DNA of 64,000 bases from IMG/VR virus record IMGVR_UViG_3300031884_000002, positions 248,001 to 312,000 of that record. The stretch is one strand, 5' to 3'. A program made the translations under genes and the position numbers. Positions 1,998 to 54,750 of the stretch are shown here, one piece after another. How positions within the stretch are numbered: the stretch's first letter is position 1; each line of letters starts with the position of its first letter. Under the pieces are notes generated by a model. It worked only from the letters and a program-made list of their open reading frames with translations. It was not told where the DNA came from and ran no database searches.

Positions 1998-2003
1998 TAA
2001 TTT

Positions 2004-16790: not shown

Positions 16791-16837
16791 TGTAAGTTAT
16801 ATCAATTTAAGTTTTGATAAATTGATATTTATATTAT

Positions 16838-23395: not shown

Positions 23396-24364
23396 ATGAA
23401 TAAACAACAATTAAATAAGAAAAAAGTTATATGGGAAGAAAAAAACTTAACAGAACAATCGAAGAACTCCGAATCGCCCGCCGAATTAGACAACAACGAT
23501 TTTATAATAAACACAAAGAACGACTCAATGCCGAAACAATGCGAAAATATTGGGAAAATAAAAAAAATAAATTGGAATAATCCAGTAGAAGTAAAAGAAA
23601 GACAACAATTATATAATCAAAAAAATAAAGAAAAAATTAAATTACAACGTCGTTTATATTATATAAATAACAAACAAAAAGAAATTGAATATGCTAATAA
23701 ATATAATTCCGAAAATAAAGAAAAAATAAAAGAAGCCCGTAAATTAAATAAACATAGAACAAAAGAATATGATTCTAAATATAGACTAAAAAATAGAGAA
23801 AAAATTAAATTACGACAAAGATTTGATTATAAAATAAATACTAAAAAATATTTAGAAAAAGCTCATAGATATAATATAAATCACAGAGAAAAAATAAATA
23901 ATAATGCGAAAATATATAGAAAAATAATAAAAAATAAAGAAAACCGAAAAATATATAATAGAAATTATAATAGAATTAAAAATGTATTAGACGTAGAATA
24001 TAAAATAAAACATAGACTTAGAAATAGGTTGAATAAAATGATACATCGAAACAATAGAACAGCCTCAGCAATTAGCGATTTGGGATGTTCGATGGAAAAA
24101 TTTAAAAAATACATCGAAAGTAAATTTAAACCGGGAATGACTTGGGATAATTATGGAAACAATGGATGGCATTTTGACCATATACGTCCATTAGTATCAT
24201 TTAACTTAACTATTAAAGAAGAATTATTAGAGGCAGTTAATTATACTAATTTACAGCCGTTATGGGCGACAAGTGAAATAGCAAGAAAACACGGAGATAT
24301 GAGTTCAATAGGAAATTTAGAAAAAGGAAATAAAATCATTCTGGGTAAGATACTTCAAATGTAG
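23396..24364 (+). CDS. HNH/endonuclease VII-like homing endonuclease
   Basis: basic helical repeats then LGCS..FKKYIESKFKPGMTWDNYG..WHFDHIRP..NYTNLQPLW..NLEK; true start may be ATG 23528. Confidence 0.8.
   Translation: MNKQQLNKKKVIWEEKNLTEQSKNSESPAELDNNDFIINTKNDSMPKQCENIGKIKKINWNNPVEVKERQQLYNQKNKEKIKLQRRLYYINNKQKEIEYANKYNSENKEKIKEARKLNKHRTKEYDSKYRLKNREKIKLRQRFDYKINTKKYLEKAHRYNINHREKINNNAKIYRKIIKNKENRKIYNRNYNRIKNVLDVEYKIKHRLRNRLNKMIHRNNRTASAISDLGCSMEKFKKYIESKFKPGMTWDNYGNNGWHFDHIRPLVSFNLTIKEELLEAVNYTNLQPLWATSEIARKHGDMSSIGNLEKGNKIILGKILQM
23431..23580 (+). CDS. small basic helical protein overlapping the HNH gene 5' end in another frame
   Basis: ATG 23431-TAA 23580: MGRKKLNRTIEELRIARRIRQQRFYNKHKERLNAETMRKYWENKKNKLE; not in the ORF track. 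Confidence 0.55.
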   Translation: MGRKKLNRTIEELRIARRIRQQRFYNKHKERLNAETMRKYWENKKNKLE

Positions 24365-25157
24365 GATTATTTTCAATAAATAACTTCATTCTATCGTATA
24401 GACTATTATTTATTTTATTATAACTATCTTCACTTATTTCACCCGTTCTATCATCTGAATATTCTGGGGTTTCTTCATCGGAATATGTATTTGGAATTTC
24501 TGGTTTATTTTTTACTGCCGGAACAATTCTTTTAGGTTCTTGTTTATATTTTGGTCTTATTTTTGTAACTGGTTCCAACGTATCTTCTGGAGAAGTGTGA
24601 TCATCCTCTGGGCTGGGTGAGTCACTTGTTACTGGTTTTATTGCTTTTTGTTTATTTTTTTGAATAGATTTTTCAACTGATTTTTGTTGATTGTATTCTG
24701 GCTCAGGTGCTTTAACTCCAGTATCTAAATGGGAGCCTAGACTTATTAAGTGCTTACAAATTCCAATATTTGACTCGTTAAAATTTTTAGGTCGTTGCCC
24801 GTTATTAGTTGACAGTGCGGTTGAACCTATAGGTGCTACTCCTTGTTTATTTAAACCATAGGCATACTTGTATTTAAAATCGGGGCAGGAACACTCGCAT
24901 ATACAATTAACATCTTCTAAACTATTATGTTTTTTAATATCATCATTATAAAATTGTATATAACCTTTGTGCCGGTTGCCCGTGGTAGAAGGATTTGATT
25001 TATATGAAAAAACCATTCTTTCTTGATTGTCTCCAGATTGAACTGATAAATTTTTACTTGAAACTGTTTTAGCCCTATCAATACGTTTAGGATCGGAATG
25101 ACCTAGAAGATCTCTAAATGACATTTTTTCCAATAATAAATCTTTTAATTTAATCAT
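24336..25157 (-). CDS. SWIM zinc-finger protein, putative internal head protein
   Basis: CSCPDF...GICKHL (CxC..CxH); N-terminal MIKLKDLLLE. Confidence 0.65.
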   Translation of the reverse strand: MIKLKDLLLEKMSFRDLLGHSDPKRIDRAKTVSSKNLSVQSGDNQERMVFSYKSNPSTTGNRHKGYIQFYNDDIKKHNSLEDVNCICECSCPDFKYKYAYGLNKQGVAPIGSTALSTNNGQRPKNFNESNIGICKHLISLGSHLDTGVKAPEPEYNQQKSVEKSIQKNKQKAIKPVTSDSPSPEDDHTSPEDTLEPVTKIRPKYKQEPKRIVPAVKNKPEIPNTYSDEETPEYSDDRTGEISEDSYNKINNSLYDRMKLFIENNPTFEVSYPE

Positions 25158-25169: not shown

Positions 25170-25577
25170 TCATGCGGCAACCAAAGAAGGATGTTCCCAG
25201 AGAGTTAATTCATGTTCGCCATCATCGACTAATTTTATTGTGTGTGCTAATCCTTCATCTCCGATAATATATGCAAGTTTTTCTATTTCTCTAAGTTGAA
25301 ATGATTTAAGTTTTGGAATAGAATTATTTCCTCTTATATATAATTCATCGGTTCCTCCCATCCATATCAACATTAAATATCCGAGTTTATTTAAATCATT
25401 ATATACATCATCTATTCTGTCGGCTAATTCACCGTAATCATAATTTCCATATTTATTTTTTAAAACATTTTCTGCCGCCCAACTAACGTGGTCATCAACT
25501 ACAAATAAATTACCATGAGGGTCGAGAATATATCTTTCTTCTCTGGATTCTAATAGAAGTCGTTTAAGTTTAATCAT
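25170..25577 (-). CDS. hypothetical protein, putative internal head protein
   Basis: 135 aa; N-terminal MIKLKRLLLE. Confidence 0.6.
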   Translation of the reverse strand: MIKLKRLLLESREERYILDPHGNLFVVDDHVSWAAENVLKNKYGNYDYGELADRIDDVYNDLNKLGYLMLIWMGGTDELYIRGNNSIPKLKSFQLREIEKLAYIIGDEGLAHTIKLVDDGEHELTLWEHPSLVAA

Positions 25578-26478: not shown

Positions 26479-28206
26479 TTAGATCAAGTTAGCATCAGAT
26501 ACCAGTATGATCCCATAAAATTCGGGCCGGACTAGTTTCTTAGCGTAGCGGGTCATTACCCCCCTGCGAGGGGTAAAATTAATTGGATCATACACCAATG
26601 GAGTTTGAATCAAAGGAATATATGGAGAATAAACTGCACCAGTCTCCAAGAAGTTATTACCTCTAAAGCCCATCAAGATCAAGTTTTCTTGCATGTATGG
26701 GTTTTTATATACTTGGAATCTGCTTGCGAATGCTCCAACTTTGGAAACACCCATTGCAAACTTAGCAGAATCACCATCCGTATTAACTACAAATCCGGGA
26801 ATGGATTCCAAGATAGTAGCAACCGTTGGTCCCACGACCATGAAGTTAGCACCACCACGGAGAGTTAATTGATGAATACTATTGGAGATCTTTTGAATCT
26901 TTTGTCCAAGAGTTTGATACCAACTTGATTTGGTGTAGTAACCGAAACCTGCACCAGCGTTAGCAGCCGTTGAGTTATCAATAATCTGATAGCTATTCGC
27001 ACCAGTCTTGATAATATCACGATTGATCTTAGCACTCCAACGTTCCTTGTTGATGTTAGGAGCGCCGTTAATTAACATGTCAAGGATTTCGAGATCGATT
27101 TCCATTGATACATATTCCGACAATAATGCTGTTAATTCTGCTTCGGCATCGACAGAGTGATAAGCATTTAAATCTTGAGCCAATTCAGGAGTCCAAACGG
27201 CTTTCAATTTACGAGTTTTAGCAACAATAGGCTCACTATTCAATTGCAAGTTGATTTCGGGAATACCTATATCTTTATGCAATCCAGTAGAAGTACCACC
27301 AGCATCAGCAGAACCTTCAGTACCATGATCTTCGAAATCACCACGAGAGGTTGGCTCAGGTTGTAATGAGAAGTTAATGGTTGCTGGAGAAGTAATACCA
27401 GATCCACTAACAACGAAAATTAAATCATTAGGAGTATATCCACCATCATTAGGAGTAATGGTTGCACGAGTGAAACCGGGATAGTAGTTCAAAATACCAG
27501 AACCACTAACAGTAAACGAACGGATCGCCGATACATCAGGATATGATCCAGAATTAATATTGATACCGACACCAAATCCAGTAGTAGTAACTGTGAATAA
27601 TGAACCATTAGCTAAAGACGATGAAATCGCTTGATTAACAGGATCATTCACGTTACCAGTATCAAAATTAATATCAGATACACTTGCAGATGCAACTGTG
27701 ATAGAAGCAGTAGCAAAGTGATCATTGATGCTATATGCATAGCGACCAACACCATATAAACCACCAACAGGTGCATCAGTTGAACCGGATTTTACACCAG
27801 TACCACCGAATAATGATTGATAGTTAGTAGGAGAATCAGCAGTGAACGGACCATTTGACGTACCATACTTGAAGTCCAAATAGAATACTAATCCAGATGG
27901 CAAGTTCATGGGCTGTACGGAAACGAACTCCTTAGCAGCGATTTCAGCGAAAACACGGCGAACCAATGGCAAAGCTACACCAGCCCATTGTTCGGAGTTT
28001 CCTTGTGTGCCAGTAGCAGATGATTCTTCAATCAACTGTTTAGCTTGGTTTTCAAGCAATACTGACATGTTGCTCTTCTCGACTTGATTCTTCAAGCCTT
28101 CTAAGAGACCGGTTTTTTCCCATTTGGTTACTAAACCACGGGTTTCTTGTAACAATCTGGCTTGAGGATTCAAGGCAGAGATTAATAGTTGTTTTACATC
28201 ATTCAT
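26479..28206 (-). CDS. gp23: major capsid protein (T4 gp23-like)
   Basis: KWEKTGLLEGL, LLENQ, LPLVRRVF..SVQPMNLPSGLVFYL, AKTRKLKAVWTPELAQDL, YSPYIPL..FTPRRGVMTRY. Confidence 0.97.
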   Translation of the reverse strand: MNDVKQLLISALNPQARLLQETRGLVTKWEKTGLLEGLKNQVEKSNMSVLLENQAKQLIEESSATGTQGNSEQWAGVALPLVRRVFAEIAAKEFVSVQPMNLPSGLVFYLDFKYGTSNGPFTADSPTNYQSLFGGTGVKSGSTDAPVGGLYGVGRYAYSINDHFATASITVASASVSDINFDTGNVNDPVNQAISSSLANGSLFTVTTTGFGVGININSGSYPDVSAIRSFTVSGSGILNYYPGFTRATITPNDGGYTPNDLIFVVSGSGITSPATINFSLQPEPTSRGDFEDHGTEGSADAGGTSTGLHKDIGIPEINLQLNSEPIVAKTRKLKAVWTPELAQDLNAYHSVDAEAELTALLSEYVSMEIDLEILDMLINGAPNINKERWSAKINRDIIKTGANSYQIIDNSTAANAGAGFGYYTKSSWYQTLGQKIQKISNSIHQLTLRGGANFMVVGPTVATILESIPGFVVNTDGDSAKFAMGVSKVGAFASRFQVYKNPYMQENLILMGFRGNNFLETGAVYSPYIPLIQTPLVYDPINFTPRRGVMTRYAKKLVRPEFYGIILVSDANLI

Positions 28207-31984: not shown

Positions 31985-32929
31985 ATGAATAATGAAACTA
32001 TAAAATTATGTCCAATATGTAACTTACGACCATTAAAATTGGTAAAAAATTGTAAATCAAATTATTATGCTACGTGTTGTTATACTGATTGTGTTAAGCT
32101 AAAAAAACAACAAACTAATCTAAAAAAATATGGACATGTATGTGGAATTCATGGAACAAACAAACAAAAAGTAAAAGATTCTATATTTAAAAAATACGGA
32201 GTAATAAATGTTTCTCAGATTGACTGGGTTAAAAAGAAAAAAATTAAAACTTGTCAGAAAAATTTCGGATGTGATTTTCCAATGCAATCTTCTGAAATAA
32301 TGGAAAAAAGTAAGCAAACATTATTAAAATTATATGGAGTCATAAATATATTTCAAGTTCCTGATATCATAAATAAAATACATGATACTATGTTTAAAAT
32401 AGATCCAACGTTAGGAATAAGTAAATATGATTTAGTAATGCTTAAACATAGAGATAGAAACATGAAAAAATACGGAGTTCCATATTATGTTCAGACTGAT
32501 GAATTTAGAAAAAAATCAACTAAAACAATCATAGAACGATATGGAGTTGATAATTACAGTAAAACTAAGGAATTTCAAGAATTTTTAATATCATCTGGAA
32601 TTAAAAAGAATGATGAATTACGTAGTAAGTTTGATTTATATTATGGAAAAGTAATAAAATATACAAATAGAACATTTAGAAAATATAAACAGTTATTACA
32701 ACAAATATATGTTAGATCAAATAAATTTCATCTCGATCATATATATTCTATATCAGAAGGATTTAGAAATGATATAGATCCACGAATGATTGGATCATTG
32801 AGCAATTTACAATTAATTCCTGCTATTGTTAATATGAAAAAAAATTATAAATCATGGATAACTAAAGATAAGTTAATAGAATTGTATAATAAGTTATCAG
32901 ACGAAGATAAATATTTATTAGACTTATAA
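31985..32929 (+). CDS. homing endonuclease-like protein (KKYGV repeats + C-terminal HNH-like domain)
   Basis: repeated T.LKKYGV motifs; FHLDHIYSISEGF...NLQLIP..NMKK. Confidence 0.75.
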   Translation: MNNETIKLCPICNLRPLKLVKNCKSNYYATCCYTDCVKLKKQQTNLKKYGHVCGIHGTNKQKVKDSIFKKYGVINVSQIDWVKKKKIKTCQKNFGCDFPMQSSEIMEKSKQTLLKLYGVINIFQVPDIINKIHDTMFKIDPTLGISKYDLVMLKHRDRNMKKYGVPYYVQTDEFRKKSTKTIIERYGVDNYSKTKEFQEFLISSGIKKNDELRSKFDLYYGKVIKYTNRTFRKYKQLLQQIYVRSNKFHLDHIYSISEGFRNDIDPRMIGSLSNLQLIPAIVNMKKNYKSWITKDKLIELYNKLSDEDKYLLDL

Positions 32930-34291
32930 CCAACTATTCCGCTTAACATCATCGAACGTATATCGTTTAGTAATATTTCCATTTAGAAATACGATTTCTA
33001 ATTCAAGATTATCATCAAACCTTCCTCGTTGACTTGCTTTAGATATATCCAACGGAGTTTTATAAATATCATACCATGTTCCGTTTCTTTTTTGCGCCGA
33101 ACATTTAAACGCAAAACGTTCGGTGTCACGATTTAATTTTCTAACTAAATATGAACCACATCCAAACACACAAGTTTCAGCACTAAATCCGTTAGTTTTT
33201 AATGTTTCAAGTATGTTTTTTATATCGTGTTCTGTTAATGAATCTCCATATATACATCCAACGTGACTATCTAATACTTTATAATTTTTAGAATTTATAG
33301 TTCCTCCAAACCCGTTCCATAATTGTTGAGCAATCCATAATACTTGGGATTCTGGAGTATCTCCTTGGAACCTTGGACTATCGGGGCGAACAACAAATTT
33401 TCCATTTCTACTTAAAATATCAGATTTTAATTCATTACAATATACTTTAATCGCATTAGTAATATTATAACTATCGGATACAACGGATAGAATCCCGGTA
33501 GGATATTTTTTAATTAAATGTTTAGTAACTTCAAACTCTCCCTTTTCTCCAAGTGAAGTTGCAATACTATGTTCACTCGCTGGAACAGAATATGCTAATC
33601 CATCTATATTTGCATTATAATAATTAATAGCATATGGAAGAGCCATTAGACTATCGGTTCCTCTACTATTTACCAAATGTGCCATACACGCTACTCCGGC
33701 TTCTTCCATACATGACAATCCCCGTTGGGAAAAATCATGTAAGTAAAAATCTGCAAGCCACCGATTAGAAAAATCACAAGTTTTTTCAAAATAATCTTTT
33801 ATAATATTAACAATGTAATTACTTCTTGTACAGACTGTAATAGTGTCCCAAACCTGTTGTAAAACAGTTTCAAGTGCATTAGTAAGCCAATAGCAATTAG
33901 GATCTGTATTTTCAACTGTCATTAACACTGTTCCTACTGGATAATTTTTTCCTTCTTTTACCGCTTTAATTTTAACTGGAAGTTTTCCGTTATGTTTTTC
34001 AACAATATAATCCCATTTTGCACGACTCCAGACATCTCCATTAAATTTAAAATGTTCTTTTAAAATAGGCTCGGCTTGGTCTATTAATTCTTTTGTTATA
34101 ACCGTTCCTTCTAACCATTTAATTAAAATATATTGAAGTCCGAAAAATGTAGTATAATCATACATTGCTCCTTTTCTTGCTTCTAAATAAGAATATACAA
34201 CTTCAGTATTTGGCATATACATATCACTATGTAATTGTTTATAGGAATCTAAGGTCCAAATTATAGAATGTTCGTTAATTTTATTATTCAT
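32924..34291 (-). CDS. nadV: nicotinamide phosphoribosyltransferase (NAMPT/NadV family)
   Basis: DSYKQLH, FFGLQY, WLTNALET, LHDF..RG, PASEHS, SVVSDSY, VRPDS, RDTERFAFKCS. Confidence 0.92.
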   Translation of the reverse strand: MNNKINEHSIIWTLDSYKQLHSDMYMPNTEVVYSYLEARKGAMYDYTTFFGLQYILIKWLEGTVITKELIDQAEPILKEHFKFNGDVWSRAKWDYIVEKHNGKLPVKIKAVKEGKNYPVGTVLMTVENTDPNCYWLTNALETVLQQVWDTITVCTRSNYIVNIIKDYFEKTCDFSNRWLADFYLHDFSQRGLSCMEEAGVACMAHLVNSRGTDSLMALPYAINYYNANIDGLAYSVPASEHSIATSLGEKGEFEVTKHLIKKYPTGILSVVSDSYNITNAIKVYCNELKSDILSRNGKFVVRPDSPRFQGDTPESQVLWIAQQLWNGFGGTINSKNYKVLDSHVGCIYGDSLTEHDIKNILETLKTNGFSAETCVFGCGSYLVRKLNRDTERFAFKCSAQKRNGTWYDIYKTPLDISKASQRGRFDDNLELEIVFLNGNITKRYTFDDVKRNSWL

Positions 34292-36386: not shown

Positions 36387-36910
36387 TTATTTAAATTATT
36401 GAATGGTTTTTGACATAAAATATCAACATAGGTCATTATTTTTTTATACACTTCATCTTCTTTAGTAAATCCAAACCGCTTGGTTGCTTCATCATCAATC
36501 CATTCTCTTAAATTGGTTCCAAACTCCTCCGAACGAGCTTTCCAATCTGCTGCTAATTCCGCCAGATATACATCGGGCATTCCTTTAATCCCAGAACTCC
36601 AAAACTCTGGGTGATGGGCGTTTGTTAAACTATGATGATGAATTGCTAATTTTAATTTTAATTTAGATTCTTCTTCTTTGGTTGGTTGCGTAGAAGACAT
36701 AAACTCAAACTCAATTCCACTGAACTTAGAAGAATCATGAATATATCCATTGGCAATTAACTGTTTTCCTAATTCTAAATGACCTTGTAAAATCAAAGAT
36801 TCTCCTAATAATAGGCAATTATCCTCCACATTTCTAATGTGGCGAGCAATTGAACGTATTTTAACAAGCATTTCTTCGGCTTGTTTTTTCAATCTATCAT
36901 TTCTTTTCAT
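36383..36910 (-). CDS. HD-like metal-dependent phosphohydrolase (DUF5662-like)
   Basis: H..NV, HDSSK, HH..N.HHPE, ELAADW; start ATG 36910. Confidence 0.7.
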   Translation of the reverse strand: MKRNDRLKKQAEEMLVKIRSIARHIRNVEDNCLLLGESLILQGHLELGKQLIANGYIHDSSKFSGIEFEFMSSTQPTKEEESKLKLKLAIHHHSLTNAHHPEFWSSGIKGMPDVYLAELAADWKARSEEFGTNLREWIDDEATKRFGFTKEDEVYKKIMTYVDILCQKPFNNLNK

Positions 36911-36919
36911 ACAAGCCAA

Positions 36920-36947
36920 AGTGTATCAGATACTTACCAGAAGTCAA
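36920..36947 (-). promoter_or_regulatory. sigma70-type promoter
   Basis: TTGACT-16 nt-TACACT, 9 nt before ATG 36910. Confidence 0.6.
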
Positions 36948-37199
36948 GTATATTTTAACACTGTATTCATCATTTCTTCATCTATTTCTTTTGAAATCTC
37001 CTCATTCAATATACGCATTAGTTCTTCTCCCGCATCAATATTATAATATGCTGTTAAATTTTGTTCTAATTCAGCAGTCCAAGTGCATTTTAATACTCGT
37101 TTTTGACTTGCCGGTTTAACATTTTTAAGTAAACTTGGAGCAAGTGCCAATGCACCTGTTAATACTGGTAATAATTTAAAAAAAACTTCTTCTATTCAT
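36944..37199 (-). other. frameshifted mini-gene: Tat-like signal peptide + major-capsid fragment
   Basis: AGAGGA RBS, ATG 37199 MNRRSFF*; removing one T from the T8 run (37178-37185) gives MNRRSFFKLLPVLTGALALAPSLL.. fused to RVLKCTWTAELEQNLTAYYNIDA..EID, 22/42 aa identical to MCP. Confidence 0.7.
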
Positions 37200-41505: not shown

Positions 41506-43200
41506 TCAAATATTCCATTCATACTTAAAATTACCACAATCCCATATTCTATCCCATCCATTATTTTTCATATTTTCCCATTCTGATAAAGAAGGATTGA
41601 ATGATTTTAGTATTTTTGATAATTGGTCTTTTCTAAAATTAAACCTATGATATCTCTTATAGTTTTTACGATGATTTCCAAAATACCAGTAACTCGGAGC
41701 AGTTTTCCCTGTGAGTTTTAAGTTTAATTTTTCATATACGTTAGAATTAGAAAAACTCCACCGTCTATCAGCATATGATATAATTTTAATTGGTTTATAA
41801 TTAGTAATAAAGTGTTTTAGTAGTTTATCGCATATGCCGGTTATTATATAAGAAGTTTTAACACATAATCTATATAATTCATATGTTCCATCTTTTTTAA
41901 CCTGTCCTAAACATTTTCTAAGTTGTCCGAATGTTGCCACTGCTACTAATTCATTGTTATGATATGCACCAAGTCGAATAGAAGACGTTTTTTCTTTTCC
42001 TTGAATGTGATTATTATTCAGAAAATCTATATAAGAATTATCGGTTATTTCTTTAATAATACATTTTCTTGCATTTATTTTAATTGAGGCATTACGTTTT
42101 AGGATATGTTTTAACTTTGATTTAATTAGTTCCTTTTTATTTATCCATTCATCCTCAAATAAATGAATAAGTCTAATTCCTATTTTTTCACATTCTTCCG
42201 TTTTTGATACGTGATATGTTTTATTTTTACATCCTCCTATTTCACTGTGCCAGTATAATCCATCACATTCTATTGCAATTTTCAATATGGGTATGTATAT
42301 ATCTAACTCTCTATTATTTAATAATATTCGTTTGTTTTCTTCTACTGATATGGTAGACGGTAATATTGAACGAATAAAATCGGTAACTTCTTTTTCAAAT
42401 GTAGATATACCAGAATTGCAGGTAGTGCATCTAGGCAAATCTCCATCTTCTAAACAATCATCGAATACAACTTTACATATATTACATTTAAACTTATATT
42501 TCTTAAATAATCCTCCGCTCAGATATTCATCTCTTGAAAATAACGGTTCGGCTAATGACTGTAACCTATTACTTGTAAACAAACTATCATAAAATATTCC
42601 CCGTCTTGTATTTATTCTTTTATTAGCCACCGACTTTACTTGTTGTATATTTTTTACTCCGTATTTCTTAAATACCGCATTTTCTATTTTAGATTTATCA
42701 CTTAATATCCACTCTACTCCATAATTTTTTAAACACGTTTCTTTTTTCTTATTTGATATTTCTAATGATTTTGACACATTATCAACACCATATTTTTCCA
42801 TGATTGTGGCTTTGCATTTTTCTTTCACTGTCGGATTCTGAAATCCATATTCAGTTCCGTATTTTTTAATATTTGAGTATTTAATGTTATTTTTTGTAGA
42901 TTGATTTGTCTGGGCGCATTTATATGAACAATTTTTGGAATACCCTAATCCGTAAGAATGAAATTTTACTAAATTATTACAGTTTATATTAGAACATTTT
43001 ATAGGTTCCAATTTATTATTTAGAATATGCCATACTCTTTGACCTATAGTTATATCATCTGGTAAAAACGAAGTTGCCGCAATTATTTCATTATATTCAA
43101 ATAATTTAGAGTTTACCGTAAACCAACGTAATGACATTCTACTTGAAATGGTTATATTTTTACAAAATAAATTTTCCAATATCCAGTTTTTTAAGTTCAT
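41506..43200 (-). CDS. Hef-like homing endonuclease (KKYGV repeats, PD-(D/E)XK domain)
   Basis: ELDIYIP..KIAIECDGLYWH..GIRLIHLFEDEW; ARKC; SYADRRW; RIWDCG; start ATG 43200. Confidence 0.8.
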   Translation of the reverse strand: MNLKNWILENLFCKNITISSRMSLRWFTVNSKLFEYNEIIAATSFLPDDITIGQRVWHILNNKLEPIKCSNINCNNLVKFHSYGLGYSKNCSYKCAQTNQSTKNNIKYSNIKKYGTEYGFQNPTVKEKCKATIMEKYGVDNVSKSLEISNKKKETCLKNYGVEWILSDKSKIENAVFKKYGVKNIQQVKSVANKRINTRRGIFYDSLFTSNRLQSLAEPLFSRDEYLSGGLFKKYKFKCNICKVVFDDCLEDGDLPRCTTCNSGISTFEKEVTDFIRSILPSTISVEENKRILLNNRELDIYIPILKIAIECDGLYWHSEIGGCKNKTYHVSKTEECEKIGIRLIHLFEDEWINKKELIKSKLKHILKRNASIKINARKCIIKEITDNSYIDFLNNNHIQGKEKTSSIRLGAYHNNELVAVATFGQLRKCLGQVKKDGTYELYRLCVKTSYIITGICDKLLKHFITNYKPIKIISYADRRWSFSNSNVYEKLNLKLTGKTAPSYWYFGNHRKNYKRYHRFNFRKDQLSKILKSFNPSLSEWENMKNNGWDRIWDCGNFKYEWNI

Positions 43201-43221
43201 ATGCTTAGTCTTTGTAATATA

Positions 43222-43249
43222 ATTATAACAAAAAGACAAAATATATCAA
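43222..43249 (-). promoter_or_regulatory. sigma70-type promoter
   Basis: TTGATA-16 nt-TATAAT with extended TG. Confidence 0.55.
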
Positions 43250-43272: not shown

Positions 43273-43899
43273 TTAGTTCAATTCGGAGAGAATGTTATAA
43301 ATCAACTCGTCGGTTCGTTCCCATCGGTTGGTCATTGGATTTTTAACAATTCCTTCGGCAAGTGAAATTTGTTCTACGGGTGCCATAAACGCACCTTGAA
43401 CTGAAGGATTACTTACAAAGTCCCAGCATATAATACTGTAATCATTATTAACTTCAACCGAAGATTCTGATAATTTTCTTACGGAACCAGTTCCACGGCT
43501 TGATATTCCAACTCTGATATTACACTTGAATAACTCTCTCAAAATATTTCCACTTGGAGTTGTTAATACATCAATGTCAGCAATTAAATCATTACCATTC
43601 CATTTAAGACCAACTATATTATGAGATACATTTTTAAGATTTACAACTTCAGTTTCAGCATGGTCTAATTCTCCAACTGCTCGTTTTTCATTTATAAATG
43701 TATTAACATATTCCGATACACTTTTATCCAAAACATCATCGGGATATACTCTTCCATTTTGATTGCGGACACCCTTTCTTTGTACTAAGCCACGAACTCT
43801 AAACGGTTTGGCTTCATTCATTAGGGACTCTTTTAATAAAGTATCATCTACCTCAAATGTTATACATTCTATTAACAATTTTTTATTTATATCATTCAT
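43273..43899 (-). CDS. gp21: prohead protease (T4 gp21-like)
   Basis: NQNGRVYP, GELDH, VSH, TPSGNI, GISSRGTGS, WDFVSNPS. Confidence 0.95.
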   Translation of the reverse strand: MNDINKKLLIECITFEVDDTLLKESLMNEAKPFRVRGLVQRKGVRNQNGRVYPDDVLDKSVSEYVNTFINEKRAVGELDHAETEVVNLKNVSHNIVGLKWNGNDLIADIDVLTTPSGNILRELFKCNIRVGISSRGTGSVRKLSESSVEVNNDYSIICWDFVSNPSVQGAFMAPVEQISLAEGIVKNPMTNRWERTDELIYNILSELN

Positions 43900-44615: not shown

Positions 44616-44630
44616 AATATATAAATATAT

Positions 44631-45485
44631 TTATTTTTCTCTATAAACCTTCTTTATTCGTAAATCCCAATATTGGTCTTTTTTATTCTCTTCCAATTTA
44701 ACAACTTTTAACAACGGGGCTTTATTATAAAATAGATTTTGTAAACCTTTATTATCTAATTGATATTTTAACATATTGGACGGTATTTTTAATTCAAATA
44801 CCGATACTATTACTCCATGTTCTTTTCGGTCAGTCCAACCTATTTTTTTAACTAAATCTTTTAACGGAGTTTCTTTTTTCTTTAACAGTAAAGGAAGCCA
44901 TGATTTAATATCTTCAGTTATATCGAAAATTGAATATGCCTCATAATGTTTATTAACATTAACATCTTTTTCTTCTTCTTTAATATGAGATATAGGTTCC
45001 GGATTTAAAACAGGGACTTTAGATTGATTGCTATTAGGGCTATTATTGACAGGATTAGGATTATTGTTATTATCATGTGGAACCTCCGGTTGTTTAATTT
45101 GGGCTGGATTGACTCCCTTTTGAGGAGATGGTTGACCGGTTGCCTGTCCTATAATTTTAATTTTCTCACTCGTGGATAAAAAATATTTTTTTGGTTTAGA
45201 TGACATATCAGTAGCAATTATCACATAATGCCCATAATAATTTTCAATTGTAACGTTATTTATATCAAACTCATATTTGGTAGAAAACTGTTTATATCCT
45301 CTTGAAGATTTAGCAATAACTCTTTTACCCTTTAGATATTGGTTAATTTTAGTTTGATATTTTTTAATCAATTCTTTAGATTCTGTTTTTAATGAAGTTA
45401 AGAATTCAGAATACTCAATTCCAATATCAAAAAATTGAAGATTATCATCTGTTGTATTTTCTAACAATGTCGCTAATATTATCAT
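44631..45485 (-). CDS. hypothetical protein, putative head protein
   Basis: 284 aa; MIILATLLE leader; P/N-rich linker. Confidence 0.6.
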   Translation of the reverse strand: MIILATLLENTTDDNLQFFDIGIEYSEFLTSLKTESKELIKKYQTKINQYLKGKRVIAKSSRGYKQFSTKYEFDINNVTIENYYGHYVIIATDMSSKPKKYFLSTSEKIKIIGQATGQPSPQKGVNPAQIKQPEVPHDNNNNPNPVNNSPNSNQSKVPVLNPEPISHIKEEEKDVNVNKHYEAYSIFDITEDIKSWLPLLLKKKETPLKDLVKKIGWTDRKEHGVIVSVFELKIPSNMLKYQLDNKGLQNLFYNKAPLLKVVKLEENKKDQYWDLRIKKVYREK

Positions 45486-47031: not shown

Positions 47032-50000
47032 TTATAGTATTTCCTTTATATTTACCTCATCTAACATAGATGGTAATGTTGATTCTTTAATCAATTCTTT
47101 TTTTACATCAATAGGCTTGTCAAAAAACTCAGATAAAGACAATATTAACTTGGAGTTTCTGTTTTTCATTTGTTTATTATCTTGTACCGGTTTTTTTATT
47201 TCTTCAAGTGCATATGGAGAATCTCCTTCAAAGTTTTGATATAATTCGCTTTTCTTTTTAAACTCGCTATTCTTTCTTGGTTTTCTATTGAGTTCTAAAT
47301 GTCCCAATGGGTCTTCTCCAAATGGATGATCGCTCGCCTTATGCTCTCCACTTTGGTCTCGATTAGCATCTTCTTTAACTATATCTTCCGGTTTTCCGAT
47401 TTTAGGCTTCTCTTCGGTTTCGGGATTTGGTTCTTCTTCATTTCCCTCTCCTCCTTCTTTATTCCCTTCTCCCTCCTCACCCTCTCCTTCTAAATCTCCA
47501 AGATCGGAAAGTCCACCTCCACCACCATGTCCTCCACCACCACCGAGACCACCCAATCCACCACCTTCTCCTTTTTCTCCACCTCCACCACCCGTTCCTA
47601 TTTTCTTCATAGGCATAGCTGGATCATCTCCATCATTTTCAATAGCCGCCAATCTATATTTGCGTTTTGCGAACTCTATTACTGATTTCATTTCCGTTTC
47701 AATATCATCATTAGACATTTGGAATATATATTTATAGATATATTCAGGAGAAAATAAACCACTTTCCATCATATCTGTAGACAATGCTGTTTTTTCAGAT
47801 AAAATGCTTATTTTCTCTTTTTCTAATATAGTACTAGAATTAGTTAGTTCAATTTTGAAATTGATTAAACTTTCATCTCTATATCCCTGAGCATATAAAT
47901 GTATAACTCCTATCTTTTCCAATTCCACGCACAGTATTTTCTGAATACGTTGAATAGTTCGGGCAAATCGTATATCTTCATTGCTTAATGTTGCCTTACT
48001 ACCACCTTCTTCTCCAAAGTTTAAGAATGTTTTTGGTATTTTTAAAGCGGCAAACATCTTATTTTTAAGATATTCAACATCATCAATACCTGTCCAATCC
48101 ATACCTGGTAGAGTATCTATTCTAGTTCCCGAATCACTTCCACGAGTAGGGATATAAAAGTCATCCAACATATTTTGAAGATTGAACTTGAGATTATATT
48201 CTCCTCGTTCATTCATATATGGAACTTTTTTAATTTTATCCTGTAATTTCTGCATGTAATTATCAACTTCGGCTGGTGGAATGTTGCCTATATCAACATA
48301 AAATATTCTTCTTTCGGGAGCACGAACTACACGATGAATCATCATTGCGTCTTCCAATAGGGATAATTGTTTCCATATTCTTCTTGCACCTTCCAAATAA
48401 GAACGACCATATGGGAAGAAGTTAGAATCGCCCGTTAATCTAAAATGGCAAATCTGCCAGTTTTCCAATACTTCGGCTTGGGATGTATCAGTCGGACGGA
48501 TTTGAAACTTGACATACTTCTTATTATAAGGGTCGGCATTTTCAATTCGCTCTACATTTTCCGCATTTATAGGCTCCACCATATAAACACCATACTCTGG
48601 ACTAACATATACTTTTAAAAAATGATCTCCTAATTTTAAAGTATTTCTAAGCCATCCCCATAAATTAAAGTCTAGGTTTAAAATATCATCGTATAAGTTT
48701 TCAAGTATTTCTTTAACATTATTATTTTCACAGTGTACGGTAAGCATTTTACCAAGTGCATTAGTCGTAAGACAATTATGGGTAAATAATTTAGATCCAT
48801 CCTTAGTTTCTATCGCATATAAATGTGAACTAGTTCCTACATTTACTAAATCATATGCTTTATATTCGCCACATGGTTCTACTGATATTACTCTATGATT
48901 ATTTGATTTTGTATAATCAGCGTATGAGTTATATCCTATAATTTTATATTTTAATCTATCTATACGAGTAATATTATATTTATTACATATTTGTTTATTT
49001 AATACACTACAATCTTCTCTGAGAATGTTATATTTCTGTTTTAATTCTTTTCTAGATAATCCGTTTATTATATCTTTTTCATATTCCTCCATATTTATGT
49101 GTTCGAAACGATTTACGGCTTCAATCCATCTTCCGTTTTTATTTTTGGTTAACTTATAACCATTTCCAAACATTCCATTCTTATTTCCATTTCTTCCAAA
49201 CTCTTTATTTCTATCTTCTTTAGACATTCCTTCCAGTCGCTTTAACATAGTAAAATGACAATTTTCGGAATGATATTTTCTAGTTTCATCATTCCAATAT
49301 CTTCTATGTCCTTCTCTGGTTTTTTCTTTATATTCGTGTGTTTTTGTTTTATCTGCCCATATTTCTTTATTAAATTGAGAGTGTATTTTTTTATGCTCTA
49401 TATAACCAACCCATTTAAGATATTCTGGACTATTATTTAATTTATTAAACGACGAATGATGAATTACTTTATCGGTTTCACATACTGTTTCTCGCTGAGT
49501 TATTAACGAAGGTTCATTTTTTGCAACTAATCTATGAGTAAATTGCCATTTTCCATTTATATATAACATCTCATATCCATTCATAAATTTGAAATTGGAT
49601 AATTTAGTATTAAATATTTTTAACGATGTCCCTAATTCAAGTTTATCGGTTGATATAATAGACATATCTGATTTTACCCACATATGATTAGACGTACATT
49701 TTATCTCGGTTCCATCGTCCAATAATACTTTATACATTGGTTTAATACCATTATATGCCACTCGTTCACATTTTTCGGGTTTGAAGTTCCCATCGGAATC
49801 TATAGAATATACCCAGAAATCTGTTTTATTTTGATTATATAAATCTTCAATTTTTACTTTATCTCCATTCAATAATGGTATAATAGTGTTCCCCTCTATG
49901 CATTCGTCTGCTACAATATCTAAAGTTGCATTTAGAATTGGGTCCATATCCATTGTATTGTGTGAAAATACAGTATCTGATGCAAAATTTTGATATTTTT

Positions 50001-51294
50001 CAACTGTTACATCATATACATCTATTTCTCCGACATATTCTATGGATTTTACTTTATGATTTAATTTAGTAAAAATCTCTTGTTTAAACGATTTCCAGTT
50101 ATGATTGTTAGATTTTAATCGATTGGTTATAAGTGATATATCACAATGTAAATATTTAGATACTTCTTTAAGATTTAATTTTCCATAATTTCTATAATAC
50201 TCAAAAGATTGCTCTTTTATTATATCAAATGTTAATTCGTCTCTATAATTTGGATTTTTTCCTAAATTATAATTTCTGGTTTTACAATATGTTTTTAATG
50301 ATTTAGAACGTACTTCATTAGATTCTTTCGTATGTATTTTTCCATAAAATGGATTATTAGTTCCAGATCTTTCACCATTCCAATGATGAAACTTTCTATT
50401 TTTATATCCTTCGGAAGAATGTATTTTTTCTAATGTTTTTTGTTTATTTTCAAACGACCACATTTTATCAGTTACTAATTTAATATGATATTGTTTATGT
50501 GCTGTTTTATCCATTATAACTAAATTATCCGGCATATTATATGATGGATTGAACTGTTGATGATGAACCACTTCATTATCTTTGAGAGGTCTATTAAATT
50601 GTTCTGCTATTACATTGTGTTCTGGTTGCCATCCTTTTGAAAAATTATAAACATGCCTATATCCTTTGTTATAAAAATCTTTTTGATAAAACGGCATTAT
50701 AGAGTCCCCTACTTTTATATCTTCTAATTTTTTATAATCTCCATTTCTCATTAAGAACGGATGTCCTCCGCTTGCTATTATATATTTACCCTTTTCAAAT
50801 GTTAATTTCCATGCTTTTAATTTTCCTCCATCTTTTTTTCTTGGATGATATGCATTTCCCAATTTTATAGAGTTTGATTCGTGGTCATAAGAATAAACAT
50901 AAAATCTTTCTTGTGGTTTATTTTTATATTTTTCAGCCAACTCTGCTATTGTAGGATACGTTCCATCTGGCAGTGGAATGATAGTTTCTCCTGCCACACA
51001 TTGATAATCCCTAAACATTTCAATACGAGCCGCTTGATAAGATAATGAAAAGTCTCTAGAATATGCATTATACGCAGTTGAACGAATACGATTAAATCTA
51101 TCTCGGAGAGAGTTTCTATCTCCTGCCATCATCGAATGGTCGGTGTCTTTAACAATTAATTGTTTTCCACCGACATTTCTAACTATTGTTTCTGATGAGA
51201 ATAAAGTTTTTAACCGAGCATATAAAGATTGTTTCTTTATATCTACGATATCATCGTTAATTGAATTTGGTCTATTTATTTGGTTAAGTGCCAT
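47032..51294 (-). CDS. gp20: portal protein (T4 gp20-like) precursor with two inteins
   Basis: [68 protein letters not shown]; spliced product 696 aa. Confidence 0.95.
   Translation of the reverse strand: [1420 protein letters not shown]
48775..49902 (-). mobile_element. intein 2 (376 aa) with HNH homing endonuclease
   Basis: starts [10 protein letters not shown], block B CTSNH, ends AYDL..FTHN followed by Cys; internal [20 protein letters not shown]. Confidence 0.92.
49957..51000 (-). mobile_element. intein 1 (348 aa) with HNH homing endonuclease
   Basis: starts [10 protein letters not shown], ends VYDVTV..NF..VFSHN followed by Thr; internal EHNVIA..VVHH..N..PDNL and NUMOD3. Confidence 0.92.
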
Positions 51295-51343: not shown

Positions 51344-52957
51344 TTAACCAATTAGCCATTTTAATGACTCAACTTCATTGTTTATACCGCCCGTTTTCAT
51401 ACTCCATGGATCATTTGGCATGTTTCTTTGATTATTATGATATACTGGAACGTTGTCAATTTTTGCTTGTCTAAAATGGTCAAGAGATGACCTAGTTAAA
51501 TCTATTCCTTTTTGTCTAAGTAATAATGCAGTATCTCTTATCCACAGTCCAATACATAAACTCATGACTAAATCATCGTTATAACCTTGCATTGCTTGTG
51601 CCTTGAAGTTTTTCCAAATGAAAGTTTCCAATTCTGATAAGGTTCTGGCGGAATATATTTTAATTTCTTTTTCCGACATATATCTGCGAAGGTAATCTAT
51701 CATCACAGGTCGAGTTTTCATAGATGTTGAAAATCCTGCCGTTGATTTTTTTTCTTCTGCATTATATCTATTAGAATGCTGATGTTCTGGGTCAACATAT
51801 TTTAAATCATCCGTCATATAAAATAAGTTTGAATATTTTCTATTTATAACTTGTTGAATAACTGCCCATCCCGTATTTTCACGTTCAATTACTAATAATG
51901 CAGTGTTGTATTCCGCCGCAAGATTTACTAACATATTTCCATATTCTGTAGTTCCTATTTGACCTTTATATTCGGCACATTGTTCTAACGATACCGCATC
52001 TAAAACATGACATGCTTGATAATCTCCACCATCTCCACGAGCTGTATCGGCTGATAAAATATAAGATTTATCATAATTGGGTTCTTTCCAATACCACAAA
52101 CATCGGTCACTTAGTCGTTTATCATATGGGTCAGTTCTAATATGTTTTTTATAATATTCTATCAATTCTAGAGCTATAACGTTATCTCCGGATGCTAACC
52201 AATCACAATCACATTCCTGACCTGCTAATGATGCTCCCAATTCCTTTGTTTGAGCGTCTCTCCATGCTTGATTTCTCTCTGGGTGTAAATCCCACGGAAG
52301 CCTAATAGGATTAAAATTATTTCTTTTTTCACTCGCATCGCACCACATTCTATGGAAAAAGTTTCCATATCCATTGGGAGTTGATAAAATAATAGAATTA
52401 CCACCCGTTGACAATGTACTCCAAGATGAAGCCCAAATATCATCTATGTTTTCAATAAATGCGGCTTCATCAATAATAAGAAGATATACTGCCATAGAAC
52501 GACCAGCATCACCACTGGATGATACTGCTCTTATATGTGATCCATTTTTAAATTTTAATGATAATCGATTATCTTCAATGCATGGTATTTTTAACCAAAC
52601 CGGCAAATTATCATTTGCAAATCTAACTTTTGAAATTAACTCTTTCGAAACTTCTTGTTTAATCGAAATAATAAGAATATTCTTATCTTTATTGAATATC
52701 ATTACCCATAATGAATATGCCGCCACTAATGTAGAGATACCCATTTGACGAGATTTTAAAACTATATTAAACTTATTATCGGCAAATTGTTTAAGCGTAT
52801 CTTCCTGAAATGGAAATAATTCAAATTTTAAGGTTCCTTTTATTTGATGTTGTATCTTTACATAATTTTTCATGAAATATACAGGAGACGCTGCACATTT
52901 GGCATATTCTTCCGCTACTATTTCTTGTAATGTTTTCTTTTTTGCTGGCTCACTCAT
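51344..52957 (-). CDS. gp17: terminase large subunit (T4 gp17-like)
   Basis: LFPFQ, KSRQMGIST, LIIDEAAF, LSTPNG, ADTARG, DDLVMS. Confidence 0.95.
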   Translation of the reverse strand: MSEPAKKKTLQEIVAEEYAKCAASPVYFMKNYVKIQHQIKGTLKFELFPFQEDTLKQFADNKFNIVLKSRQMGISTLVAAYSLWVMIFNKDKNILIISIKQEVSKELISKVRFANDNLPVWLKIPCIEDNRLSLKFKNGSHIRAVSSSGDAGRSMAVYLLIIDEAAFIENIDDIWASSWSTLSTGGNSIILSTPNGYGNFFHRMWCDASEKRNNFNPIRLPWDLHPERNQAWRDAQTKELGASLAGQECDCDWLASGDNVIALELIEYYKKHIRTDPYDKRLSDRCLWYWKEPNYDKSYILSADTARGDGGDYQACHVLDAVSLEQCAEYKGQIGTTEYGNMLVNLAAEYNTALLVIERENTGWAVIQQVINRKYSNLFYMTDDLKYVDPEHQHSNRYNAEEKKSTAGFSTSMKTRPVMIDYLRRYMSEKEIKIYSARTLSELETFIWKNFKAQAMQGYNDDLVMSLCIGLWIRDTALLLRQKGIDLTRSSLDHFRQAKIDNVPVYHNNQRNMPNDPWSMKTGGINNEVESLKWLIG

Positions 52958-53619: not shown

Positions 53620-53790
53620 TTATTTTTTGATTTTTAATTTTTCCCACTGTTTAAGGTTATTTGATTTCCAAAGAAGATATTCTTTTTTAAGATGGAAATA
53701 ACATGATTCTGGAACCATAATTGAAAAATACCGCCAGCCATCGCTTTCTTTTAATTTTCTATATTTTGATTGGTATTCTTTATTTGCCAT
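53620..53790 (-). CDS. small basic hypothetical protein (56 aa)
   Basis: MANKEYQSKYRKLKESDGWRYFSIMVPE...; TATTTATA 4 nt upstream; not in the ORF track. Confidence 0.55.
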   Translation of the reverse strand: MANKEYQSKYRKLKESDGWRYFSIMVPESCYFHLKKEYLLWKSNNLKQWEKLKIKK

Positions 53791-53874
53791 CTCTTATAAA
53801 TAGCGTTAAAAACACTAAATAACACTAAAATAAACTAATTATGTTAATATAAGATAATAATATATTTATATAAT

Positions 53875-54750
53875 ATGATTAGTTTAAAACAATTATTAGA
53901 AGGAATATCGTATCTATCAAATACTAATAAACTGAATTTTAGTTTTGATAGTGATTTTCCAGCACCCGACGATAATTTAATATACTTGAAACCAAATAGA
54001 AGAAATTCTAGGTTATATAATATAAAAGGATTTAAAATTTTTTATGGATATTATTTCAATCGAAATTTTACTCCTAATAAACCTTCGTATTTTAAACCAA
54101 ATAATACACAATCTATAAATGATGCAAGAACAACAATAAAACACGTTGATATTAAAAAAATATATATGTTTAATGGGATGGATTCTGCTGGAAATTATAC
54201 ATGGACTAGGGATGAATCTCCAATTATAAAAATGATAGATTTAGCAATTGAACGATTTTCTGAATTGGTAGATTTAAACTCATTTACATCCATCATATCG
54301 GCTCCTTCTAGTTCTCGGTTGAATGATTTAATATTAGATAGATTTCAAATGAGTGTTGGAACCCATATAATTACAAAAAATGCACTTCAAAAAAATGAAA
54401 TAAATCAAATTGCATATTTTATGGATGAATATAATAAATTAAGCGATGACGGTAAGCGAAAATTTCACTCTGTAAAAAACGGAATTGTTAAAAAAACAGG
54501 AACATTTGAAATGAAACACGTCCCTCCTACTATGCGAAGTTTATTCCATAATTTTATATCATTGAAACAAAATAATCAAAAAGAATCTATTAAAATAGCA
54601 AATAAAATATCAAATGGAAAAGTTTTAATAATAGACGATACTATAGGAACTGGTGGAACATTTTTAGAAATAGTTAGAGAAATAAAACCATTAAAACCAA
54701 AAGAAATATATTTATTTGGACTTTTGCAAGATTATTATTATAGTGTATAA
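53875..54750 (+). CDS. type I phosphoribosyltransferase-fold protein
   Basis: PRPP-binding motif KVLIIDDTIGTGGT; APSSS loop; MISLKQLLE leader. Confidence 0.8.
   Translation: MISLKQLLEGISYLSNTNKLNFSFDSDFPAPDDNLIYLKPNRRNSRLYNIKGFKIFYGYYFNRNFTPNKPSYFKPNNTQSINDARTTIKHVDIKKIYMFNGMDSAGNYTWTRDESPIIKMIDLAIERFSELVDLNSFTSIISAPSSSRLNDLILDRFQMSVGTHIITKNALQKNEINQIAYFMDEYNKLSDDGKRKFHSVKNGIVKKTGTFEMKHVPPTMRSLFHNFISLKQNNQKESIKIANKISNGKVLIIDDTIGTGGTFLEIVREIKPLKPKEIYLFGLLQDYYYSV

What the first reader, a model, noticed from the sequence alone, without database searches (positions are those of the whole stretch)
53875..54750. Phosphoribosyltransferase with late motif and putative capsid-targeting leader, inserted antisense between packaging and replication operons
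Seen: PRPP-binding motif VLIIDDTIGTGGT, MISLKQLLE leader, TATTTATA 4 nt upstream, and opposite orientation to its neighbours. Inference: an enzyme packaged and injected with the DNA, acting before phage gene expression (nucleotide-pool manipulation, counter-defence, or competitor toxicity) rather than a housekeeping salvage PRTase.
Basis: partly seen in the sequence, partly recalled or inferred. Interest (0 to 1): 0.6.

Follow-up and report, generated by a model that had tools for sequence, protein, structure and literature searches.

The report
Capsid-tagged phosphoribosyltransferase-like phage effector
A 354-kb lake-water phage related distantly to T4 encodes a divergent phosphoribosyltransferase-fold enzyme that carries the same 9-10-residue N-terminal tag as ten unrelated proteins of the phage, a tag built like T4's capsid-targeting sequence, so it is most likely packed into the head and ejected into the host with the DNA.

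Summary
Window 53875-54750 (+) is a 291-aa ORF with a PRPP loop (PF00156, just above cut-off) and a confident type I PRTase model. The nearest solved structures are ComF and ShosT, only about 1 Z unit above salvage enzymes. The family is phage-borne and uncharacterised.

The leader is real. Eleven otherwise unrelated proteins of this genome start with it (consensus MIKLKxLLxE; 0.08 expected by chance). It matches T4's capsid-targeting sequence in length and in functional positions: hydrophobic at 4 and 7, then L/I-x-E. The genome encodes a gp21-type (S77) prohead protease and a gp23-type capsid protein.

Other tagged proteins are an ART-PolyVal ADP-ribosyltransferase, a 2H phosphoesterase, a CCA-adding enzyme and three head-module proteins. 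A 27%-identical homologue in another phage lies in a cassette with ART and CCA genes carrying the same tag. In IMG/VR the tag starts ORFs in at least 120 contigs, and 44 of those loci also hold this lineage's head genes.

TATTTATA is a genuine promoter-class motif: 47 of 223 upstream regions versus 3.3 expected, spacing to ATG peaking at 4 nt, shared with head genes, and exclusive of the sigma-70-like class.

Packaging, cleavage, ejection and enzyme activity are inferred. No proteomic or RNA data exist. I rate it a new variant of a known kind.

The parts
53875..54750 (+). Gene for a 291-aa PRTase-fold protein (P0001) with an N-terminal leader
53875..53901 (+). Codons 1-9: leader MISLKQLLE, predicted propeptide ending in L-L-E; predicted cleavage before G10
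   Evidence: Shared leader in 11 unrelated ORFs. Residues 1-9 are not in any predicted secondary-structure element (block 1-10 mean pLDDT 61; residues 1-4 under 50) and the first strand starts at residue 10. T4 CTS rules from PMC9026906.
53862..53870 (+). ATATTTATA promoter-class motif (L class), ending 4 nt before the ATG
   Evidence: conserved upstream of the orthologues with a 6-nt spacing
54622..54660 (+). PRPP-binding loop, residues 250-262; D254, D255 invariant and T262 nearly invariant in the family
53795..53802 (-). Second, divergent TATTTATA motif, 4 nt before the 56-aa ORF that heads the 220-aa ORF and TerL gene string
53620..53790 (-). 56-aa ORF, divergent neighbour and first gene of the putative packaging operon
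43273..43899 (-). Prohead protease of the T4 gp21 family (Peptidase_S77), the predicted processing enzyme
   Evidence: 79.7 bits, cut-off 27; T4 gp21 structure 5jbl, E 8.5e-12
26479..28206 (-). T4 gp23-type major capsid protein; its propeptide region has conserved L-L-E sites
44631..45485 (-). 284-aa leader-bearing protein (9-residue variant) between the portal and protease genes
25170..25577 (-). 135-aa leader-bearing protein downstream of MCP, with an L motif upstream
24336..25157 (-). 273-aa leader-bearing protein downstream of MCP, with an L motif 4 nt upstream

Best explanation
The gene encodes a divergent, phage-specific type I PRTase-fold enzyme. It is made with virion proteins from an ATATTTATA-type promoter. 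Its first 9 residues act as a T4-style capsid-targeting sequence that docks the protein into the assembling prohead core. The gp21-family (S77) prohead protease then removes the tag after Glu9 (L-L-E|G). The mature basic protein (residues 10-291, calculated pI about 9.5) stays in the head and is ejected into the next host with the DNA, together with a set of similarly tagged enzymes: an ART-PolyVal/Tpt1-like protein, a 2H phosphoesterase, a CCA-adding enzyme, a ParB-C-like protein and others. There it would use PRPP, or bind a phosphoribosyl nucleotide, in a ComF/ShosT-like reaction at the moment of DNA entry, to perturb or restore the host nucleotide or signal pool before any phage gene is expressed. 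Shown computationally: the fold, the PRPP loop, the shared tag, the protease and MCP, the promoter class, and conservation in other phages. Inferred: targeting, cleavage, packaging, ejection, catalysis and substrate.
For: Tag: 11 of 524 ORFs carry it versus 0.08 expected. The 11 proteins share no similarity after residue 12, and no other long ORF in six frames has it. Columns 2, 4 and 10 are invariant; 7 and 8 are L/I/M. In T4, residues 4 and 7 are the targeting positions, 8 and 10 the processing positions, and gp21 cuts after L/I-x-E (PMC9026906; CTS sequence in 10.1101/2021.01.19.427310). The S77 protease and gp23 MCP are present. Three tagged genes lie in the head module. The tagged operon at genome 231-238 kb follows a gene with the same promoter motif. 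Co-tagged proteins are ART-PolyVal, 2H/Acb1-like, CCA+HD and ParB-C-like. The distant homologue P0016 lies in a cassette with ART-PolyVal and CCA genes that bear the same tag. Codon choice within the tag varies across phages of 30-40% GC. Cultured relatives with S77 also have tagged ORFs. In an IMG/VR scan, 132 of 140 matches start ORFs of at least 60 aa. 44 of 120 loci hold this lineage's protease, portal, TerL or MCP. The few annotated tagged proteins are zeta toxin, lysozyme, ART-PolyVal, MPTase-PolyVal and 2H. One family member is fused to a phage lysozyme. In the AF2 model residues 1-9 lie in no predicted secondary-structure element, confidence there is lower (block 1-10 mean pLDDT 61; residues 1-4 under 50), and the fold begins at residue 10. 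Fold neighbours are ComF and ShosT.
Confidence: 0.6

Rival explanations
1. Head-internal, non-catalytic protein. The tag does target it to the prohead, but the PRTase fold serves as a nucleotide- or DNA-binding module, as proposed for ComFC. It would help organise packaged DNA or its exit rather than act as an enzyme in the host.
For: The nearest structure is ComF, a DNA-uptake protein. The mature part is basic, calculated pI 9.5, like T4 internal proteins. Invariant Lys and Arg residues (K89, K173, K214, R221) lie outside the PRPP loop.
Against: The catalytic D254-D255 pair is invariant and T262 of the phosphate-binding loop is nearly invariant across 40 divergent members. Fusions to NTase, SLOG and hydrolase domains point to nucleotide chemistry.
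Confidence: 0.15
2. Ordinary cytoplasmic late or middle enzyme of phage nucleotide metabolism or DNA modification. The N-terminal motif would then be a translational or regulatory feature, or a recombination scar, with no role in capsid targeting.
For: Many genes without the tag share the same promoter motif. A-U-rich first codons favour initiation on mRNAs with short or no leaders. The phage carries other nucleotide and NAD enzymes, for example NAMPT.
Against: Similarity stops exactly at the Glu. Codon choice within the tag varies while the peptide is kept, in genomes of 30-40% GC. The tag also occurs on internal operon genes with overlapping stop and start codons. It is tied to head modules across the lineage. 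NAMPT, the clear metabolic PRTase, lacks it.
Confidence: 0.17
3. Housekeeping-type purine or pyrimidine salvage PRTase acquired from a host.
For: PF00156 match and weak hits to HGPRT and APRT models.
Against: All equivalog scores are about a tenth of their cut-offs and cover only the PRPP loop. The protein has an extra N-terminal beta domain and a 75-residue insert. Relatives are viral. There is no close cellular homologue.
Confidence: 0.03

Closest known systems
T4 capsid-targeting sequence cargo (internal proteins IPI-III, Alt) processed by prohead protease gp21
   Same: A roughly 10-residue N-terminal tag shared by otherwise unrelated proteins. Hydrophobic residues at 4 and 7, L/I at 8, Glu at 10 (L/I-x-E). 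A gp21-family protease and a gp23-family capsid protein are in the genome. An ADP-ribosyltransferase is among the tagged proteins. Many tagged proteins are small and have no known family.
   Different: The consensus differs (MIKLKxLLxE against MKTYQEFIAE). The tagged set includes a PRTase-fold protein, a CCA-adding enzyme, a 2H phosphoesterase and an 873-aa protein. The lineage is aquatic, low-GC and only distantly T4-like (MCP 27-29% identical to Pelagibacter phage and cyanophage T4-type capsid proteins over about half its length, 52% to Mel-JY01 and Flavobacterium phage immuto). Nothing is verified experimentally.
PRTase domains of phage polyvalent proteins and their solo relatives (Iyer, Burroughs, Anand, de Souza, Aravind 2017, PMC5512222; Pfam PRTase-CE)
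   Same: A PRTase-fold domain in phage proteins predicted to be delivered with the DNA. The DD motif is kept. One family member is fused to a lysozyme. The role is unknown.
   Different: Delivery would be by a short cleavable tag rather than fusion to MuF or inclusion in a multidomain protein. The ComFC-like conserved Arg after strand 2 is not conserved here. PF24390 scores 15.2 bits against a cut-off of 27.
ComF/ComFC competence protein (PDB 7p0h)
   Different: No zinc finger (P0001 has no cysteine). TIGR00201 scores 18 bits against 233. No competence gene context.
ShosT, toxin of the Shosta defence system (PDB 8zvc; PMC11961720)
   Different: Lacks ShosT's N-terminal pyrophosphatase domain. 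No DprA-like partner gene is adjacent. The PADLOC ShosT model gives only E 0.012.

Membership tests
T4-type CTS-tagged head cargo | Short N-terminal leader shared by otherwise unrelated proteins of one phage | tested here: met
   11 ORFs versus 0.08 expected; no pairwise similarity beyond residue 12
T4-type CTS-tagged head cargo | Hydrophobic residues at positions 4 and 7, and an L/I-x-E cleavage motif ending at about residue 10 | tested here: met
   L4 is invariant; position 7 is L/M/I, position 8 L/I, and E10 is invariant. P0001 is one residue shorter (L7-L8-E9) but keeps L-x-E; its orthologues are 10-mers. Rules from PMC9026906.
T4-type CTS-tagged head cargo | gp21-family prohead protease encoded by the phage | tested here: met
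   PF03420 79.7 bits; aligns to 5jbl with E 8.5e-12
T4-type CTS-tagged head cargo | Protein present in virions with the leader removed, and ejected on infection | not testable with these tools
   No proteomic data. The complex prediction gave no answer.
T4-type CTS-tagged head cargo | Expressed together with head proteins | tested here: inconclusive
   Shares the ATATTTATA motif class with portal, head-module and terminase-operon genes, and that class excludes the sigma-70-like class. No RNA runs exist.
Type I PRTase superfamily (PF00156) | PRPP loop (hydrophobic strand, two acidic residues, T/S-G-x-T) on a five-stranded Rossmann-like core | tested here: met
   27.6 bits versus 26.3; 30 of 40 family members match; AF2 model plus Foldseek and VIA matches
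Salvage PRTases (HGPRT, APRT, UPRT, OPRT equivalogs) | Score above the curated NCBIfam cut-off over the whole domain | tested here: not met
   Best is 21.7 bits versus 150 for HGPRTase. All matches cover only residues ~224-285.
ComF/ComFC | N-terminal four-Cys zinc finger, conserved Arg after strand 2, TIGR00201 cut-off | tested here: not met
   P0001 has no Cys. The R148 position is not conserved in A2. TIGR00201 scores 18.2 versus 233.55.
Polyvalent-protein PRTase (Pfam PRTase-CE PF24390) | Pfam gathering score | tested here: not met
   15.2 bits versus 27
ShosT (Shosta toxin) | N-terminal pyrophosphatase domain plus PRTase, next to a DprA-like ShosA | tested here: not met
   PADLOC ShosT E 0.012, partial match. 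The structural alignment covers only the PRTase part of ShosT. Neighbours are the packaging genes and Mre11-Rad50.

The most novel reading that the evidence does not exclude
A ten-residue tag (consensus MIKLKxLLxE) is a portable capsid-delivery code used across a large clade of aquatic, distantly T4-like phages that includes jumbo phages. If so, sequence alone would reveal their 'ejectome'. In this phage that set would comprise a previously uncharacterised PRTase-fold family, a CCA-adding tRNA repair enzyme, a 2H phosphoesterase and an ART. This is the domain repertoire of polyvalent proteins, delivered as separately tagged single proteins.
Probability: 0.5. Interest if true: 0.78.

Novelty: new variant of a known kind. 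Interest (0 to 1): 0.64.

Why it matters
Which proteins a phage injects with its DNA decides the first minutes of infection, including defence evasion and host takeover. This is usually learned only by virion proteomics of cultured phages. If this tag is a capsid-targeting code, injected proteins of many uncultured phages could be listed from sequence. It would also show that enzymes such as a CCA-adding enzyme and a PRTase-fold protein are pre-loaded weapons. It gives an enigmatic group of phage PRTase domains, whose role has been open since 2017, a concrete and testable delivery route. Two cultured phages with tagged ORFs, Flavobacterium phage immuto and Microcystis phage Mel-JY01, make the test practical.

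Tried and rejected
- tblastn of P0001, P0014 and P0016 against 50,697 phage records found no match, so no cultured phage carries this PRTase family.
- The word-index protein search found only three close homologues. The exhaustive profile search was needed to find 131 relatives.
With the 4-sequence alignment it gave two loci in which the ORF is truncated.
- A profile of the family against PDB sequences matched only the PRPP loop. It gave no preference for ComF (E 0.048) over HGPRT (3.8e-5).
- Complex prediction of the protease with P0001 residues 1-45 gave no answer (score 0.00), which is neither support nor evidence against.
- The look-up of sequencing runs found only lake-water and freshwater DNA runs and no RNA.
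- The sigma-70 consensus scan and the terminator scan around the gene gave nothing above chance.
- The salvage-PRTase reading was rejected. A Sec- or Tat-type signal peptide was rejected by inspection, because the tag is 9-10 residues, charged, and lacks a hydrophobic core.
- No other genetic code was used.

Full report
**Setting**

The window is bases 248001-312000 of a 353,772-bp IMG/VR virus record with 30.5% G+C. Near-identical sequence is held by lake-water and freshwater metagenome runs, and no RNA run holds it. The phage has T4-type head genes:
- a Gp23 major capsid protein at window 26479-28206;
- a Portal_T4 portal with two intein stretches and an HNH domain at 47032-51294;
- a T4-type large terminase at 51344-52957;
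- a Peptidase_S77 (gp21-type) prohead protease at 43273-43899, which aligns to the T4 gp21 structure 5jbl with E 8.5e-12.

By capsid protein the nearest cultured phages are Microcystis phage Mel-JY01 (52% identity) and Flavobacterium phage immuto (51.5%). Metagenomic huge phages follow; T4-type Pelagibacter phage and cyanophages reach only 27-29% over about half the protein.

**The observation**

The ORF at 53875-54750 (+) encodes 291 residues (P0001).
- The PRPP loop is residues 250-262. PF00156 is just above its cut-off, at 27.6 against 26.3 bits.
- All other family hits cover only that loop and fall far below their cut-offs. These include PRPP synthetase, HGPRT, APRT, ComF, and the PADLOC models PRTase_III-A, ShosT and PsyrT.
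- The gene lies on the + strand between - strand genes. On one side are a 56-aa ORF, a 220-aa ORF, TerL and the portal; on the other is a Mre11-Rad50 fusion.
- Position and orientation are the same in two related contigs.

**The protein family**

The word-index search found only three homologues, at 67-69% identity. A profile search of 1.84 billion representatives found 131 relatives at E up to 1e-3, mostly 240-290 aa.
- PF00156 matches 30 of 40 members sampled.
- Across those 40, K89, K173, D254 and D255 are invariant. G10, D27, S145, K214, R221, L251 and T262 are nearly so.
- No member was found in 50,697 deposited phage genomes.
- The ESM Atlas places the protein among viral clusters. The nearest named cellular neighbour is the ComF family.

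An AlphaFold2 model built on the 40-sequence alignment is confident (pLDDT 90.7, pTM 0.89).
- Residues 1-9 fall in no predicted secondary-structure element and have lower confidence (block 1-10 mean pLDDT 61; residues 1-4 under 50). The first strand starts at residue 10.
- A beta-rich N-terminal part and a roughly 75-residue insert surround a type I PRTase core.
- Foldseek ranks H. pylori ComF first (E 1.2e-4) and ShosT second.
- By sequence profile only the PRPP loop matches solved structures.

Wider family members are fused to a phage lysozyme, Pol-beta nucleotidyltransferases, YAcAr/SLOG-DprA-like domains or an alpha/beta hydrolase. These partners point to nucleotide-centred conflict biology rather than salvage.

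Iyer et al. 2017 (PMC5512222) described PRTase domains in phage polyvalent proteins and related solo forms. They predicted delivery with the DNA and called the role enigmatic. The present family lacks their conserved ComFC-like arginine and scores below the PRTase-CE cut-off.

**The leader**

I scanned the N-termini of 524 called ORFs of the whole genome. Eleven begin with M-I-x-L-x-x-[LIM]-[LI]-x-E or the 9-residue form. From the rate of the same pattern inside proteins, 0.08 are expected, and there are no internal copies that include the Met.
- A six-frame scan with any start codon finds the same eleven and only five trivial ORFs of 32 residues or fewer.
- After removing the first 12 residues, no pair of the eleven is similar (all BLASTP E at least 0.1).
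- Columns 1, 2, 4 and 10 are invariant. Column 7 is L/M/I and column 8 is L/I. Similarity ends at the Glu.

In T4 the capsid-targeting sequence is the first 10 residues of the internal proteins (MKTYQEFIAE). There, residues 4 and 7 carry targeting, residues 8 and 10 carry processing, and gp21 cuts after L/I-x-E (PMC9026906). The leader here has the same length and the same constrained positions.

P0001 has a 9-residue form ending L-L-E before Gly10. Its orthologues have the 10-residue form.

**What else carries the tag**

Three tagged genes lie in the window and belong to the head module. Two are just downstream of the capsid gene (24336-25157 and 25170-25577). One lies between the portal and the protease (44631-45485).

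Seven tagged genes lie outside the window. In locus L012 they are:
- a 2H phosphoesterase (LigT/Acb1-like);
- a protein matching a ParB C-terminal-domain PHROG family;
- an ART-PolyVal protein with a Tpt1-like segment;
- a CCA-adding enzyme with an HD domain;
- two proteins of unknown family.

An 873-aa tagged protein lies in L013.

T4 Alt, an ADP-ribosyltransferase, is the classic packaged and injected enzyme. ART, 2H, ParB-like and PRTase are all polyvalent-protein domains. The phage's clear metabolic PRTase, NAMPT at 32924-34291, has no tag.

**Other phages**

A 27%-identical family member (P0016) lies in a 40%-GC phage. Its cassette holds six consecutive tagged genes, including an ART-PolyVal protein and a CCA-adding enzyme; a seventh, a 96-aa ORF between them, has only a loosely similar start. 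Codon choice within the tag differs between phages while the peptide is kept. That argues for selection on the peptide, not on the RNA.

A degenerate DNA pattern for the tag finds one ORF in Flavobacterium phage immuto and three in Mel-JY01, plus one looser copy. The reversed-pattern control finds none. Both phages have S77 proteases.

- 132 of 140 matches start ORFs of at least 60 aa, and 114 lie within 15 codons of the upstream stop.
- 44 of the 120 loci, found only through the tag, also hold homologues of this phage's protease, portal, terminase or capsid gene. Tagged ORFs often start directly after the protease gene.
- Most of 121 such proteins have no Pfam family. The annotated ones are zeta toxin (two), phage lysozyme, ART-PolyVal, MPTase-PolyVal, a metallopeptidase and a 2H tRNA-ligase phosphodiesterase.

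The capsid propeptide region of eight lineage members has conserved L-L-E sites, one of them L-L-E-G as in P0001.

**The promoter motif**

TATTTATA occurs in the 50 nt upstream of 47 of 223 genes that have an upstream gap. 3.3 are expected, and its reverse complement occurs 3 times.
- The distance from the motif to the ATG peaks sharply at 4 nt (26 cases), then 3 and 6 nt (8 each).
- 64 genes carry it close to the start, with a median length of 241 aa. They include the portal, head-module genes, the gene string leading to the terminase, very large tail-fibre-sized genes, and the gene heading the tagged operon.
- 59 genes carry a sigma-70-like TTGAC[AT]...TATACT pair. Their median length is 109 aa and they cluster at 20-90 and 110-130 kb.
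- Only one gene has both.

So the motif defines a non-early class shared with virion genes. 'Late' is an inference. The 4-nt spacing suggests very short or absent 5' leaders, which is untested. The orthologues of P0001 keep the motif with a 6-nt spacing.

**Conclusion**

The most likely reading is a capsid-targeted, protease-processed, ejected PRTase-fold effector. I put about 0.6 on the delivery route. My confidence in any particular substrate is much lower.

The rivals are a non-catalytic head-internal nucleotide- or DNA-binding protein, an ordinary cytoplasmic enzyme whose N-terminal motif has another role, and a salvage enzyme. The last is effectively excluded.

Noticed in passing
genome 231004-237744 (locus L012:3004-9744, - strand) and genome 105993-108614 (L013:1993-4614, +): Seven further genes outside the window carry the same N-terminal tag. 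They include a 2H/Acb1-like phosphoesterase, a protein matching a ParB C-terminal-domain PHROG family, an ART-PolyVal/Tpt1-like protein, a CCA-adding enzyme with an HD domain and an 873-aa protein. A packaged CCA-adding enzyme would be unusual.
   Followed up: partly
whole genome; e.g. window 53862-53870, 16825-16833, 44620-44628: ATATTTATA is the reverse complement of the T4 late promoter core. It sits at a sharply fixed distance (mode 4 nt) from the ATG of 64 genes and is mutually exclusive with a sigma-70-like promoter class. This suggests leaderless or near-leaderless mRNAs.
   Followed up: partly
window 47032-51294 (-): The T4-type portal gene is interrupted by two intein splicing-domain stretches, with an HNH endonuclease domain inside.
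   Followed up: partly
window 25602-26363 (-) and 41506-43239 (-): A GIY-YIG/NUMOD3 homing endonuclease lies between the capsid gene and the tagged genes. A 577-aa ORF with DUF7487, Mom-like and REase_MTES_1575 matches lies directly after the protease.
   Followed up: no
window 32924-34291 (-): Nicotinamide phosphoribosyltransferase (NAMPT_N plus NAPRTase), a likely NAD salvage gene. It has no tag and no ATATTTATA motif close to its start.
   Followed up: no
window 36836-37099 (-): A second Gp23-like fragment (40.5 bits) with two in-frame TGA codons. It may be a decayed capsid or vertex paralogue, or a split gene.
   Followed up: no
window 30446-30769 (+): A 107-aa ORF starts with a tag-like sequence that has Asp instead of Glu at position 10. 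In T4 an Asp there blocks processing but not targeting (PMC9026906). The promoter motif lies 3 nt upstream.
   Followed up: no
window 43273-43899 (-) and 26479-28206 (-): The protease has L-I-E at residues 9-11, recalling the LIE-9 site noted in T4 gp21. The capsid propeptide region has L-L-E-G, L-L-E-N and L-I-[ED]-E sites conserved in eight lineage members.
   Followed up: partly
L020 (LR756501.1, 735-kb uncultured phage) 1475-3740: Three consecutive ORFs next to that phage's CCA-adding enzyme begin with a different shared N-terminal pattern (M-I-x-x-F-x-[IL]-[FY]-E). It may be another form of the same kind of tag.
   Followed up: no
L029:9995-10291 and L028:4397-4663: In two IMG/VR contigs the orthologue of the PRTase-like gene keeps the tag, but the ORF ends after 89-98 residues. 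This could be truncation, a frameshift or the contig end.
   Followed up: no
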